A DNA stretch of 61,862 bases. Source: Perkinsus chesapeaki ATCC PRA-425. Its lineage: Eukaryota; Protista; Perkinsozoa. Below, piece by piece: positions 46,776 through 61,862 of this stretch (position 1 is its first letter; each line of letters starts with the position of its first letter). The stretch lies in NCBI GenBank assembly GCA_013115145.1, contig JAAPAO010000150.1, positions 1 through 61,862 on the forward strand, in the 5' to 3' direction. The position numbers were made by a program, and so were the translations under genes. The notes under the pieces are model-generated. The model was not told the DNA's origin and did not search any database. It saw nothing but the letters and a program-made list of their open reading frames with translations.

Positions 46776-46891
46776 TTTTCAACGAGCTTCATCTGAGCCG
46801 TTGAGAAGACAGGGCTTACGAACAGGGTATCGATAGCACCCACCTTGTGATACTCATCAGTACCATGACCGTTGAGAGTGCCAGGCACGTA
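46776..46891 (-). repeat. 116-nt copy of an internal segment of the CD36-like gene (50981-51096)
   Basis: Identical to 50981-51096 except for one base. Confidence 0.95.
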
Positions 46892-59303: not shown

Positions 59304-61304
59304 TGTGGTAACAAAGAGCTACACAACAGTTTAACAGCTTATCACGCAAGGGTTTCTCATTTCGGGTCATCCGAGCACTGTAACGTCCTGTCCCTAGATT
59401 ACCAAGATTCAGTTACTATCTTCAACACGCGGCCGCTGACTGGCGTAAGGTTCAAACAGTCATCTGGCCTCAACGAGGCTCCAACTCTTACAGCCAGTAT
59501 GAGCCGCCTAGAAGAACCTCGGTAAGGGAGCGACGCTCCCGGAGCGTTATCATCCGCGTCACTGACGCGGCGTCAGCATCGATTATTCGCACGAACCACT
59601 GTGAGGGCCTGATCATTGTATTCCCAGTCATGCACCACATCCTCCTTTGGGATGCCACTACGCTATTTCAAAATCCGATTATATAAGTTGGTGGAAGCTC
59701 AGAGCAGATTGGTAAGAGCCGAGATCGAACGAATAAAGCCCATCTATCGATATCGCCAAGCACCTGATGCCACCTACAGCTACTTTGCTGTTTGCTATGG
59801 AGTGACCGTTGGGCACGTGTGGGGCTCCGTTGGCTATGCGTGTCTGTTCCTGCGTGTAGTCATTTATCTACGCCGCGACGTATATTGGGTTGAAAATCTT
59901 CCAGGATGTTCTTCACGGCATGGAGGTTTTTACCATCCCGATCTCATAGTTGGCGGGTAGCCTCTCGTGAAACCATCTATAACTCAAGTATGGCTGCTGC
60001 AATTTTGCCCGGGGAGCTTGTGCATGCGTTCTTTCACATGTTCATGCGTTAATTTTTTCAAAACGTGCATACATCTAACAATACGCGTGTGACACGCGGC
60101 GTGGCAAGACATGCCGAGGCAAGATTGGGTCTTAATTTCATCGTAGACATGTTACGTGGACTCCAAACCCGAATGTGGCATAACATTGTTAGTAAACTTG
60201 TTATCATTCGATCATATGTCAAGATCAATTTTATCTACCCCTGGCGCATACGTGGAGTGCCCCTCTCAAAAAGGCAAGATGTTGAATAGAGTACTGTAGT
60301 TGTTGAGTTGACACTGAAGCAATGTCGAATGACAGACATAAAGTACACCTCAAACGCTCATGTGATAGTGCTTTTTCGCATTCTAAACTGTTCTCAGGAA
60401 TCTACAGTAGTGTGAACTATTTTCTGTACCACTACCGGGCCGGTACTACCGGTTTGGGTTGGGGATATGCACAAGTTGTTCCGAAGTTGCACAGGGTGAA
60501 CTACGTTTCGACAAAGTATTGGCATAGAGAACATCTACGCCGACTTCAGTAACGAAGAAAGTGTGATGACACGAGAGAAAGTGAGTGTTACATACGTTGC
60601 TTATGGCTACTGCTGTGCAGCTGTAACTGCAGTGTAGTACTACACTGAAATTGTCAACAATATCGTCACGACAGTGTCGTGGATTAGTTTTACCCCTTTA
60701 GTTACTACAGAGTTATTTGGAGCTCCTATCCCCACAGTGCCCCGAGCGCCGAAAATATTTACTTGCTCACGCCGTGTGCACTGTGGTAAGAAATATTTTA
60801 GGGCTTGCAACTCGGCTAAACACATGGAAAGGTGTGGTGCGCAGCCTTCATCCTCTGTCAGAGGTGGCTAGTAGAGGCTTGGATCCATTAGACGTTCTGC
60901 CTTATGGGCCTGGCTTCTGGGGGTTTTCAGTGGGTACGGCTTAGCGAGTCCCACAGTATCCTTGTGAGGTGCACACTCCAAGGGTCTCCTTAACTGGATT
61001 TTCCCCCACAGGCTGGTGGATGCGTCAAAAAAAGTTACTACACTCCAGAGTCTGAAGTTCAGACTCCGGGTTGAAAGCGATGGATTGGGAGTCCCAATTT
61101 GGGACAGTGTCCAGATCCCGCACTATAAAGGATCTGGAAATCTCGATCGCCCAGGACAGCACGAAACGGCTCGGAGATCTTGTGGATGCCAACCTTCACC
61201 TTTGGTTACGAGGATGAACGTACGATTCATTAGTTCATGTATATCGTCAATTCATTAGCGTTTAGTGACTCTTTGTGCACGCATGAACTCTGTGTGAAGG
61301 TTGA

Positions 61305-61326
61305 ACCGTAGCCATCTTGGCTCAAG
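61305..61326 (+). other. Exact Perkinsus spliced-leader (SL) 22-mer in genomic DNA, not followed by GT
   Basis: ACCGTAGCCATCTTGGCTCAAG, followed by TTCTTTTTATAG rather than an SL-RNA intron donor. Confidence 0.92.
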
Positions 61327-61386
61327 TTCTTTTTATAGTATTTGCTCTTCAACTCCCTCCTATCGCGTCGAGTATTACAGTTTGGT

Positions 61387-61611
61387 ATGGAAGATACTAA
61401 CACAGGCAATCCAGAAAGCAGAGTCAAACCGTGTCTTTTTCATTTCACACGACTACACACGCAAGAGCCAAACAGAGCACGCTCACCAAACACGGCTCCA
61501 CAGTTTCCAACTGAAACACAACCAGTGAATAACGAAATCCTACGGTATAATGATACGCGATCGCGTATGATTCATTCTTCGGACTCATCTCGAACACAAC
61601 CAGTAGCCTGA
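61387..61611 (+). CDS. Short intronless ORF (74 aa) 60 nt downstream of the SL relic; putative retrocopy, possibly decayed
   Basis: First ATG after the SL (MEDTNTGNPESRVK...); no recognisable domain; TQPV occurs twice. Confidence 0.35.
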   Translation: MEDTNTGNPESRVKPCLFHFTRLHTQEPNRARSPNTAPQFPTETQPVNNEILRYNDTRSRMIHSSDSSRTQPVA

Positions 61612-61862
61612 GAATCACAACTTGGGATTGGGTTGAGAGACAAGCCTAATCCAACTGGTATTCTTGCCCCCAGTCCGAATTAACTGGAAGGAGCATACGT
61701 GCCGCCTCGATACTGTTGAAAATGATGTTCCTATAGACAACTCAATGCCAAATGGAACGAAGTGAACAAGTCTTTAACAAGTTCAACTGAATAATAGTGA
61801 TACTGATACTATATCTATTCTCATTCACTTAACTCGTTCTACAGCATGCATTAGATATCTCT

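What the first reader, a model, noticed from the sequence alone, without database searches (positions are those of the whole stretch)
61305..61862. Perfect spliced-leader 22-mer fused to non-SL-RNA sequence: recycled mRNA or SL-targeting retroelement
Seen: exact ACCGTAGCCATCTTGGCTCAAG followed by TTCTTTTTATAG, a 60-nt leader, ATG 61387 and an intronless short ORF with stop-interrupted continuation. There is no GT donor, so it is not an SL RNA gene. Known: the SL is added to mRNAs by trans-splicing; relic SLs mark reverse-transcribed mRNAs in dinoflagellates; NeSL and CRE/SLACS non-LTR elements target SL RNA genes in nematodes and trypanosomes. Inference: a very recent full-length cDNA integration in Perkinsus, or the junction of an SL-associated element. 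Together with the intronless genes and the templated patch at 46776, this points to active RNA-to-DNA flow shaping this accessory region.
Basis: partly seen in the sequence, partly recalled or inferred. Interest (0 to 1): 0.85.

Follow-up and report, generated by a model that had tools for sequence, protein, structure and literature searches.

The report
Host spliced leader inside a solo LTR
The spliced-leader copy near the end of this Perkinsus contig is not a recycled mRNA: it lies inside a 295-bp solo long terminal repeat of a retrotransposon family that carries the host's mRNA leader in its repeats, probably because the element's own RNA is trans-spliced.

Summary
The exact 22-nt leader (PmaSL1) is at 61305-61326, with no GT donor, a 60-nt leader and an ATG at 61387.

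It is not a cDNA of a cellular mRNA, not an SL RNA gene, and not an SL-gene-targeting element. It sits at positions 198-219 of a discrete 295-bp dispersed repeat (61108-61402). That repeat has TG..CA ends and a 3-bp target duplication (CAG), so it is a solo LTR.

The same repeat start follows a pol-type ORF and a purine tract on contig C1841. Related full elements (C8, C919) carry the leader in both LTRs. Relatives in another Perkinsus assembly carry that assembly's 21-nt leader at the same place.

An SL-primed cDNA from a public RNA run matches the window from the leader, through the LTR end, into unique flank.

My best reading is that the leader marks the 5' end of R of a trans-spliced element RNA. 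A precise 7-nt deletion (GTCTCAG), which arose at least twice and occurs with exact leader copies, fits use of the next acceptor.

This scan has already reported leader-bearing LTRs on other contigs of this genome. I found no published description.

The parts
61105..61107 (.). Left copy of the 3-bp target-site duplication (CAG)
   Evidence: The same 3 bases follow the repeat at 61403-61405. Copies C217 (CGC/CGC) and C476 (CGG/CGG) and the full element on C8 (GTC/GTC) also have matching 3-bp flanks.
61108..61402 (+). Solo LTR, 295 bp, with termini TG..CA
   Evidence: Dispersed copies have different flanks: C217 (94% by BLAST, 96.6% without gaps), C476 (86%) and C2893 (76%), plus eight contig-end fragments. 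On C1841 the first 79 nt follow a 230-aa pol C-terminal ORF and a purine tract.
61110..61138 (+). 9-bp inverted repeat (61110-61118 and 61130-61138) enclosing TATAAA at 61124-61129; candidate U3 promoter element
   Evidence: Read directly from the sequence. It is only partly kept in C476 and C2893. Its function is inferred, not shown.
61305..61326 (+). DNA-encoded copy of the host spliced leader (PmaSL1), LTR positions 198-219; proposed 5' end of R
   Evidence: The leader is the only segment shared between otherwise unalignable LTR families.
61326..61327 (+). Junction that lacks the 7 nt GTCTCAG present in copies C217, C3352 and C2893
   Evidence: Alignment A1. A variant carrying the 7-nt insertion is also present in DNA run X2.
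61327..61402 (+). Rest of R plus U5 (76 nt); contains the family's in-frame start codon at 61387-61389
   Evidence: On C350 the same 85 nt run into TGGTGACAGCTG, a 12-mer shared with C206, and into an ORF that aligns with the C206 gag-like ORF.
61403..61405 (.). Right copy of the target-site duplication (CAG)
61306..61727 (+). Stretch matched by an SL-primed cDNA contig (RNA run X6): a transcript headed by the leader that reads out of the LTR into unique flank
   Evidence: record 17: 423 nt. The one difference, 61316 C>T, is the letter of the dinoflagellate SL primer.
61387..61611 (+). 74-aa ORF: 5 codons from the LTR, the rest from flanking DNA; probably not a gene
   Evidence: Similarity to other copies ends at 61402. 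The composition is low-complexity. No homology search was run on it.

Best explanation
Window 61108-61402 is a solo LTR, left after LTR-LTR recombination, of a very divergent LTR retrotransposon clade of Perkinsus with the order protease, RT, RNase H, integrase and 3-bp target duplications. Like the LTRs of at least three other families in this genome, it contains a copy of the host spliced leader. Shown here: the repeat, its ends, its target duplication, its link to a pol ORF, the leader in both LTRs of full elements, and a leader-headed cDNA from this locus. Inferred mechanism: transcription starts in U3. The primary transcript is trans-spliced at the AG that ends the DNA-encoded leader, so the mature element RNA begins with the leader, which is thereby the 5' end of R. 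Minus-strand strong-stop cDNA then ends in the complement of the leader and can pair with the DNA-encoded leader transcribed from the 3' LTR. Terminal redundancy therefore survives trans-splicing. If the next acceptor (..TCTCAG|) is used instead, strand transfer loops out 7 nt and installs a fresh canonical leader. That gives exactly the form seen in the window.
For: Solo LTR: there are sharp boundaries with unrelated flanks in all copies, TG..CA termini, and 3-bp duplications in all three full copies. Three further broken copies can be paired through matching flanks (ATA, TTC, CTG). On C1841 a pol-type ORF and a purine tract are followed by the LTR start. That ORF is 53-57% identical to the C206 polyprotein. 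A profile of the C206 polyprotein's family matches solved RTs (E 2e-21), PFV integrase (4e-21) and Ty3 Gag-Pol (3.5e-14). Leader in LTRs generally: the C919 element has 396-bp identical LTRs, a 4-bp TSD and a 2004-aa ORF with Pao peptidase and integrase zinc domains, and the leader sits at LTR position 169 in both LTRs. The C8 element has a purine tract, TG..CA ends and a GTC duplication, with the leader in both LTRs. Same-contig pairs 5.7-6.6 kb apart lie on C8, C61, C919 and C2061. Tracking of the host leader: two relatives in assembly GCA_000006405.1 carry the 21-nt leader type 100-140 nt after pol. The window's genome has no 21-nt type at all. Trans-splicing footprint: the 7-nt deletion is present in C553, C350 and C476 and absent from C217, C3352 and the outgroup C2893. 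Given the identities (C553-C217 96.6%, C553-C476 86.6%), that needs at least two events. Both full deleted copies have the exact leader, and every undeleted copy has a variant leader. Ten of 11 independent one-mismatch leader copies differ only at positions 1-3, next to the cap. An SL-headed cDNA matches this locus without a break.
Against: No full-length element with two LTRs of the window's own family is assembled, because contigs break about 73 nt inside the repeat. The cDNA comes from an SL-primed library, so the primer could have annealed to the DNA-encoded leader of an unspliced transcript. It therefore does not prove trans-splicing. No transcription start, poly(A) site or R boundary was mapped. 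Heritable leader variants (ACTG in 11 loci, the CCTATTTGG type in 4) show that the leader is often copied from DNA and not renewed. The deletion/exact-leader association rests on 2 against 4 copies. Recombination between co-packaged RNAs could spread a single deletion. The TATAAA lies 175 nt upstream of the leader, so it implies an outron that has not been observed.
Confidence: 0.6

Rival explanations
1. Solo LTR as above, but the leader is hard-coded. Either transcription starts directly at its first base, so the element mimics host mRNA 5' ends without trans-splicing, or the leader is an inherited passenger from one old capture of a trans-spliced RNA.
For: Leader variants are heritable within families (ACTG in both identical LTRs of C919 and in 9 more loci). 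Zhang et al. 2011 could not detect SL-RNA-like products from intron-less SL copies of P. marinus. The cDNA evidence cannot tell the two apart.
Against: Pol proteins of the families are only 26-57% identical or unalignable, and their LTRs share nothing else, yet the 22-mer is kept to 0-1 mismatches. A passenger would have decayed. The leader type follows the host. The precise 7-nt loss ending in a pyrimidine-AG occurred at least twice and goes with exact leaders.
Confidence: 0.28
2. One reading: a recent full-length cDNA of a trans-spliced cellular mRNA integrated here (a retrogene with a relic leader, as in dinoflagellates).
For: A complete leader is followed by a short 5' UTR and an ATG. Retrogenes with relic leaders are well known in dinoflagellates (papers listed).
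Against: Copies share 197 nt upstream of the leader with a sharp common 5' end. There is no poly(A). Similarity ends 16 nt after the ATG. No intron-bearing parent was found. No tandem truncated relic leader exists anywhere in the genome.
Confidence: 0.03
3. A variant SL RNA gene, or the junction of a non-LTR element that targets SL RNA genes (NeSL, CRE, SLACS type).
For: Undeleted copies (C217, C3352) have GT right after the leader.
Against: The window copy has no GT. Nothing after the leader resembles the bona fide SL RNA genes C411:600 and C2742:298. There is no Rfam match. No SL RNA gene remnant lies on either side. The linked enzymes are LTR-type RT and integrase.
Confidence: 0.03
4. Assembly artefact or cDNA contamination of the genomic library.
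For: The site is 536 bases from a contig end in a repeat-rich stretch of a fragmented assembly.
Against: Two DNA data sets from different studies hold the junctions. The repeat has target duplications and many independent insertion sites.
Confidence: 0.02

Closest known systems
Intron-less PmaSL1/PmaSL2 copies in the Perkinsus marinus genome (Zhang et al. 2011, PLoS One, PMC3101222)
   Same: The same 22-mer occurs in genomic DNA without an SL RNA intron. Most copies start with T, some are 'arrayed in repeats', and none is expressed as SL RNA.
   Different: That paper left them unexplained, suggesting retroposed mRNA or recombination. Here they resolve into LTRs of retrotransposons, with TSDs, purine tracts and pol ORFs.
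Relic spliced leaders of dinoflagellate retrogenes (Slamovits and Keeling 2008; Song et al. 2017, PMC5585692)
   Same: A DNA-encoded leader is a footprint of reverse transcription of trans-spliced RNA, and the locus can be trans-spliced again.
   Different: Dinoflagellate relics sit at the very 5' end of retrocopied cellular genes and pile up as truncated tandem relics. Here the leader is internal to a mobile LTR, is full length, and no tandem relics exist.
Cer1, the Ty3/gypsy element of C. elegans, another SL trans-splicing host (PMC3315495)
   Same: It is an LTR retrotransposon living in a host that trans-splices mRNAs. A Cer1 sub-genomic mRNA can carry SL1.
   Different: The 8-kb genomic Cer1 RNA is not trans-spliced, and that paper describes no leader in the Cer1 LTR. 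The Perkinsus elements instead appear to build the leader into the LTR.
SLACS/CZAR/CRE and NeSL non-LTR retrotransposons
   Same: They are retroelements physically associated with spliced-leader sequence.
   Different: They insert at a fixed site inside SL RNA genes by target-primed reverse transcription (my general knowledge). Here the leader travels inside the element to many unrelated sites.
Bel/Pao and Ty3/gypsy LTR retrotransposons
   Same: Shared features are the PR-RT-RH-IN order, the integrase zinc-binding domain, TG..CA LTRs and a purine tract. The C919 family has the Pao peptidase domain.
   Different: The window's clade is so divergent that Pfam RT and integrase-core models stay below threshold. 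It makes 3-bp instead of 4-6-bp duplications, and its gag start codon lies in or on the LTR end.

Membership tests
LTR of an LTR retrotransposon (here as a solo LTR) | Discrete repeat with TG..CA termini, flanked by a short target-site duplication | tested here: met
   61108 TG .. CA 61402, with CAG on both sides. C217 has CGC/CGC and C476 has CGG/CGG.
LTR of an LTR retrotransposon (here as a solo LTR) | The same sequence directly follows the 3' end of a pol ORF and a polypurine tract | tested here: met
   On C1841 a 230-aa ORF ends in ..GGAGGGGCCG, followed by the first 79 nt of the repeat at 97%. C206, C3300 and C8 have the same layout.
LTR of an LTR retrotransposon (here as a solo LTR) | The associated polyprotein has reverse transcriptase and DDE integrase | tested here: met
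   Profile A2 (C206 ORF plus 23 homologs) matches PDB RTs at E 2e-21, PFV integrase at 4e-21 and Ty3 Gag-Pol at 3.5e-14. Single sequences stay below Pfam cut-offs except Integrase_H2C2 in relatives.
LTR of an LTR retrotransposon (here as a solo LTR) | Primer binding site complementary to a tRNA 3' end right after the 5' LTR | tested here: inconclusive
   C350 and C206 share TGGTGACAGCTG right after ..ACA, and C8 has TGGCGACACC. No matching tRNA was sought.
LTR of an LTR retrotransposon (here as a solo LTR) | A full-length element bounded by two copies of this very LTR | tested here: inconclusive
   None is assembled, because contigs break about 73 nt inside the repeat. Full elements with leader-bearing LTR pairs exist for the C8 and C919 families.
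SL RNA gene | GT splice donor directly after the 22-nt exon, and an intron like that of the functional genes | tested here: not met
   TT follows the leader. There is no similarity to the C411 and C2742 introns and no Rfam match.
Retrogene with relic leader (dinoflagellate type) | Similarity to the parent or to paralogs begins at the leader; there is a poly(A) tail; truncated tandem relics occur | tested here: not met
   Homology starts 197 nt upstream. There is no A-tail at 61402. No SL-plus-truncated-SL arrangement exists in the genome.
SL-gene-targeting non-LTR retrotransposon (SLACS/CRE/NeSL) | Insertion at a fixed position of an SL RNA gene, with the rest of the gene on the other side | tested here: not met
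   The flanks of all copies are unrelated to one another and to SL RNA genes.
Bel/Pao superfamily | Pao-type aspartic peptidase (PF05380) together with RT and integrase | tested here: inconclusive
   Met for the C919 family. In the window's clade there are only weak protease hits. No RT phylogeny was made.

The most novel reading that the evidence does not exclude
LTR retrotransposons of Perkinsus have built host SL trans-splicing into their replication. The leader added to the element RNA serves as the terminal repeat (R) for first-strand transfer, because a DNA copy of it sits in each LTR. The LTR copy is renewed from host SL RNA, which would explain why it follows the host's leader type. 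Alternative acceptor use leaves precise, recurrent deletions such as the 7-nt loss in this window. Solo LTRs would then scatter promoter, leader and ATG cassettes through the genome.
Probability: 0.5. Interest if true: 0.8.

Novelty: new variant of a known kind. Interest (0 to 1): 0.65.

Why it matters
Trans-splicing replaces the 5' end of an RNA, and LTR retroelements need identical sequence at both RNA ends to replicate. How such elements survive in organisms that trans-splice most mRNAs has hardly been addressed. In C. elegans the Cer1 genomic RNA simply escapes trans-splicing. Perkinsus seems to show the opposite solution, with the host leader written into the LTR. This would explain the more than 100 unexplained intron-less leader copies reported in P. 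marinus in 2011. It also warns against counting DNA-encoded leaders as retrogenes in perkinsids and perhaps in dinoflagellates. It would mean that solo LTRs can donate ready-made 5' ends to neighbouring DNA, as the cDNA from this locus suggests. The idea can be tested directly with existing Perkinsus cultures and RNA sequencing.

Tried and rejected
- Retrogene reading: rejected because the copies share sequence upstream of the leader, and no parent locus was found for 61403-61722 in the genome.
- SL RNA gene reading: rejected.
- DNA transposon or MITE with a 3-bp TSD: rejected. The termini form only a weak inverted repeat (6 of 10), and the repeat abuts a pol ORF on C1841.
- Slippage as the cause of the 7-nt loss: unlikely. 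Only a 2-nt AG microhomology flanks it, and the nearby CTCA repeats would predict an 8-nt loss.
- The search for homologous proteins on the C206 ORF gave nothing. That is a word-index limit, not absence: the exhaustive search found 142 relatives.
- phmmer of the C1293 ORF against PDB gave nothing. The profile search did succeed.
- Pfam on the C8, C206 and C1841 ORFs was mostly blank.
- Look-ups of P0010 and P0012 returned no DNA. L073 and L074 end too soon after pol to show an LTR.
The LTR pairs on C61 and C2061, and the other 3-mismatch hits, could therefore not be read.
- Read laying returned only contigs. No 5' ends, strand or depth could be used, and the short pieces bridging 61313-61328 were not among those listed.

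Full report
**1. The observation.** The exact 22-mer is at 61305-61326 on the + strand. It is the only match in the window even at 3 mismatches, with none expected by chance. It is identical to PmaSL1, the 22-nt spliced leader of Perkinsus marinus (Zhang et al. 2011, PMC3101222). TT follows it, not GT. The ATG is at 61387 and opens a 74-aa ORF. The window is the complete contig C553 of a 41.7-Mb, 3544-contig assembly.

**2. The leader lies inside a dispersed repeat.**
- The genome holds 8 exact and 13 one-mismatch copies of the 22-mer, against 0 for the control. At 3 mismatches, positions 3-22 give 68 hits against 5 for the control.
- Only C411:600 and C2742:298 share an SL-RNA-type intron.
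- The window copy is embedded in a unit that recurs on C217 (94% by BLAST, 96.6% ignoring gaps), C476 (86%) and C2893 (76%).
- The unit also recurs as about 73-nt fragments at the ends of eight contigs, where the assembler broke.
- In alignment A1 every copy starts at the same base (TGTCC..) and ends at the same base (..CTAACA). The flanks on both sides are unrelated between copies.
- In the window the unit is 61108-61402: 197 nt before the leader and 76 nt after it.
- Each full copy is flanked by a 3-bp direct duplication: CAG in the window, CGC on C217, CGG on C476.
- The broken copies pair up through matching triplets: C641 with C3352 (ATA), C3125 with C3498 (TTC), C291 with C1384 (CTG).

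**3. The repeat is an LTR.**
- Contig C1841 (762 bp) is a 230-aa open frame that ends in a purine tract. It then runs into the first 79 nt of the repeat at 97% identity.
- That frame is 53-57% identical to the C-terminus of a 919-aa ORF on C206. It is more distantly related to ORFs on C3300, C1293 and C8.
- On all of these, pol ends in a purine tract followed by TGT...
- An exhaustive search found 142 relatives of the C206 ORF.
- A profile of 24 of them matches solved reverse transcriptases (E 2e-21), PFV integrase (4e-21) and Ty3 Gag-Pol (3.5e-14), in the order RT then integrase.
- Single sequences mostly fall below Pfam thresholds, so the clade is very divergent.
- C8 holds a whole element: LTRs about 6.2 kb apart, TG..CA ends, a 3-bp duplication (GTC), and TGGCGACACC after the 5' LTR.
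- On C350 and C206 the LTR end is followed by the shared 12-mer TGGTGACAGCTG. It continues into an ORF whose N-terminal part aligns between the two (E 7e-5).
- The ATG at 61387 is therefore the family's in-frame start codon, located in the last 16 nt of the LTR.
- The matching CAG on both sides makes the window copy a solo LTR.

**4. The leader is a regular part of LTRs in this genome.**
- On C919 a 6.9-kb element has two 396-bp, 100% identical LTRs, a 4-bp duplication (CACC) and a 2004-aa ORF with Pao peptidase and integrase zinc domains. It carries ACTGTAGCC.. at LTR position 169 in both LTRs. A third copy of that LTR is on C1631.
- C8 carries TCCGTAGCC.. in both LTRs.
- Further same-strand pairs 5.7-6.6 kb apart lie on C61 and C2061 (not read).
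- Families with homology on both sides of the leader are the window family, the C919 family, C3349/C72 and C8/C1068. Between families, only the leader aligns.
- The C919 polyprotein shows no BLASTP similarity to the window's clade. At least two unrelated lineages therefore share the feature.

**5. The leader follows the host.**
- Two relatives of the clade were fetched from assembly GCA_000006405.1. By my recollection this is P. marinus ATCC 50983; I did not verify that here.
- Both carry TCCGTAGCCATCTGGCTCAAG, the 21-nt PmaSL2 type, 100-140 nt after the end of pol.
- One of them has leader flanks visibly homologous to the C3300 LTR of the window's genome.
- The window's genome has no 21-nt type anywhere.
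- A more distant relative from another assembly (L070) has a short LTR with no leader. Its host is unknown.

**6. Transcription.**
- RNA run X6 is a 454 'RT-PCR' metatranscriptome. It contains a 423-nt contig equal to 61306-61727.
- Its single difference (61316 C>T) is the dinoflagellate SL primer letter.
- A leader-headed cDNA therefore runs from the leader, across the LTR end at 61402, into unique flank.
- This shows that the locus is transcribed on the + strand and is not polyadenylated inside the LTR.
- It cannot separate true trans-splicing at the AG of the DNA leader from primer annealing to that DNA-encoded leader.
- DNA runs from two studies hold both the flank junction and the deletion-type junction. 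That excludes an assembly artefact.

**7. Mechanism (inferred).** I propose that the leader is the 5' end of R.
- The element RNA is trans-spliced at the AG ending the DNA-encoded leader. This regenerates the same sequence.
- Strong-stop cDNA then ends in the leader's complement and pairs with the leader transcribed from the 3' LTR.

Three patterns fit this model:
- **(a) A recurrent, precise deletion.** The 7 nt GTCTCAG after the leader are present in the outgroup C2893 and in C217 and C3352. They are precisely absent from C553, C350 and C476. C553 is 96.6% identical to C217 but only 86.6% to C476, so the loss happened at least twice. The lost piece ends in pyrimidines plus AG, as an acceptor does. 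Splicing there, followed by transfer onto the 3' leader, would delete exactly these 7 nt.
- **(b) Deletion goes with exact leaders.** Both full deleted copies have the exact canonical leader, while all undeleted copies have variant leaders. That is expected if the deletion and the renewal come from the same event. The sample is small (2 against 4).
- **(c) Variants cluster next to the cap.** Ten of 11 independent one-mismatch copies differ at leader positions 1-3. This would follow if reverse transcriptase often transfers before copying the cap-proximal bases. That would also explain why such variants are heritable.

Weak points are listed under the evidence against the best explanation.

**8. 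Prior knowledge.**
- Zhang et al. 2011 reported more than 100 intron-less PmaSL copies in P. marinus, mostly starting with T and in repeats, and left them unexplained.
- Five full-text searches found no paper placing a spliced leader inside LTRs.
- The nearest comparison is Cer1 of C. elegans, whose genomic RNA avoids SL1 trans-splicing.
- Earlier notes of this scan report leader-bearing LTRs on other contigs of this genome, which they call P. chesapeaki. I read them after reaching the same reading, and they agree with it.
- New here are the solo-LTR case, the locus-specific cDNA, the recurrent 7-nt loss, the position bias of the variants and the cross-assembly switch in leader type.

**9. Verdict.** The structure is ordinary (a solo LTR). 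Its content is unusual, and the phenomenon it belongs to appears to be unpublished.

Noticed in passing
window 60700-61042: A dispersed repeat of about 323 bp (60710-61032) ends in an A-run and is flanked by the 10-bp direct repeat AGTTACTACA (60700-60709 and 61033-61042). It has many copies elsewhere with unrelated flanks and A-rich ends. It looks like a SINE-type retroposon inserted 75 nt upstream of the solo LTR.
   Followed up: partly
window 61723-61862: The contig ends inside another dispersed repeat of about 190 bp that starts with TG. An SL-primed cDNA of run X6 joins the leader to 61788 on the minus strand, after ..ttattcAG. No DNA-encoded leader is present there, so this looks like genuine trans-splicing of a copy of this repeat.
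   Followed up: partly
L056 (C350) 1700-2153: This copy keeps only the leader's last 8-9 nt, the R-U5 part, the TGGTGACAGCTG motif and a 114-aa gag-like N-terminus. Everything upstream of GGCTCAAG is replaced by unrelated sequence, and a chitinase gene lies 300 nt downstream on the other strand. The same junction is present in DNA run X2. Its origin is unexplained.
   Followed up: partly
L071 2511 and L072 9174 (assembly GCA_000006405.1): Retrotransposon relatives carry the 21-nt leader type with a T start about 100-140 nt after pol. The leader flanks of L071 resemble those of the C3300 LTR in the window's genome.
   Followed up: partly
L070 4180-4340 (assembly GCA_040384185.1): A distant relative's LTR begins TGTTCCAGAT..ATCTGGAA, a terminal hairpin like the one at window 61110-61138. 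It has no leader copy. The host organism is unknown.
   Followed up: no
L054 (C8) 567-702: The 5' LTR of the C8 element has a 136-bp insertion that the 3' LTR lacks. Its ORFs are split into several frames, so this copy is probably decayed.
   Followed up: no
G000 C8, C3375, C1068, C1631:1301, C217: In several LTR families the leader is followed by a similar 7-mer (ATCTTAG, ATCTCAG, GTCTCAG) although the rest of the LTRs does not align. It may be a conserved second acceptor or part of R.
   Followed up: no
G000 C739:1644, C796:356, C3300:1610, C3352:19: Four loci share the leader variant with CCTATTTGG in place of CCATCTTGG. It is also seen in DNA run X2. I could not check whether an SL RNA gene with this variant exists.
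   Followed up: no
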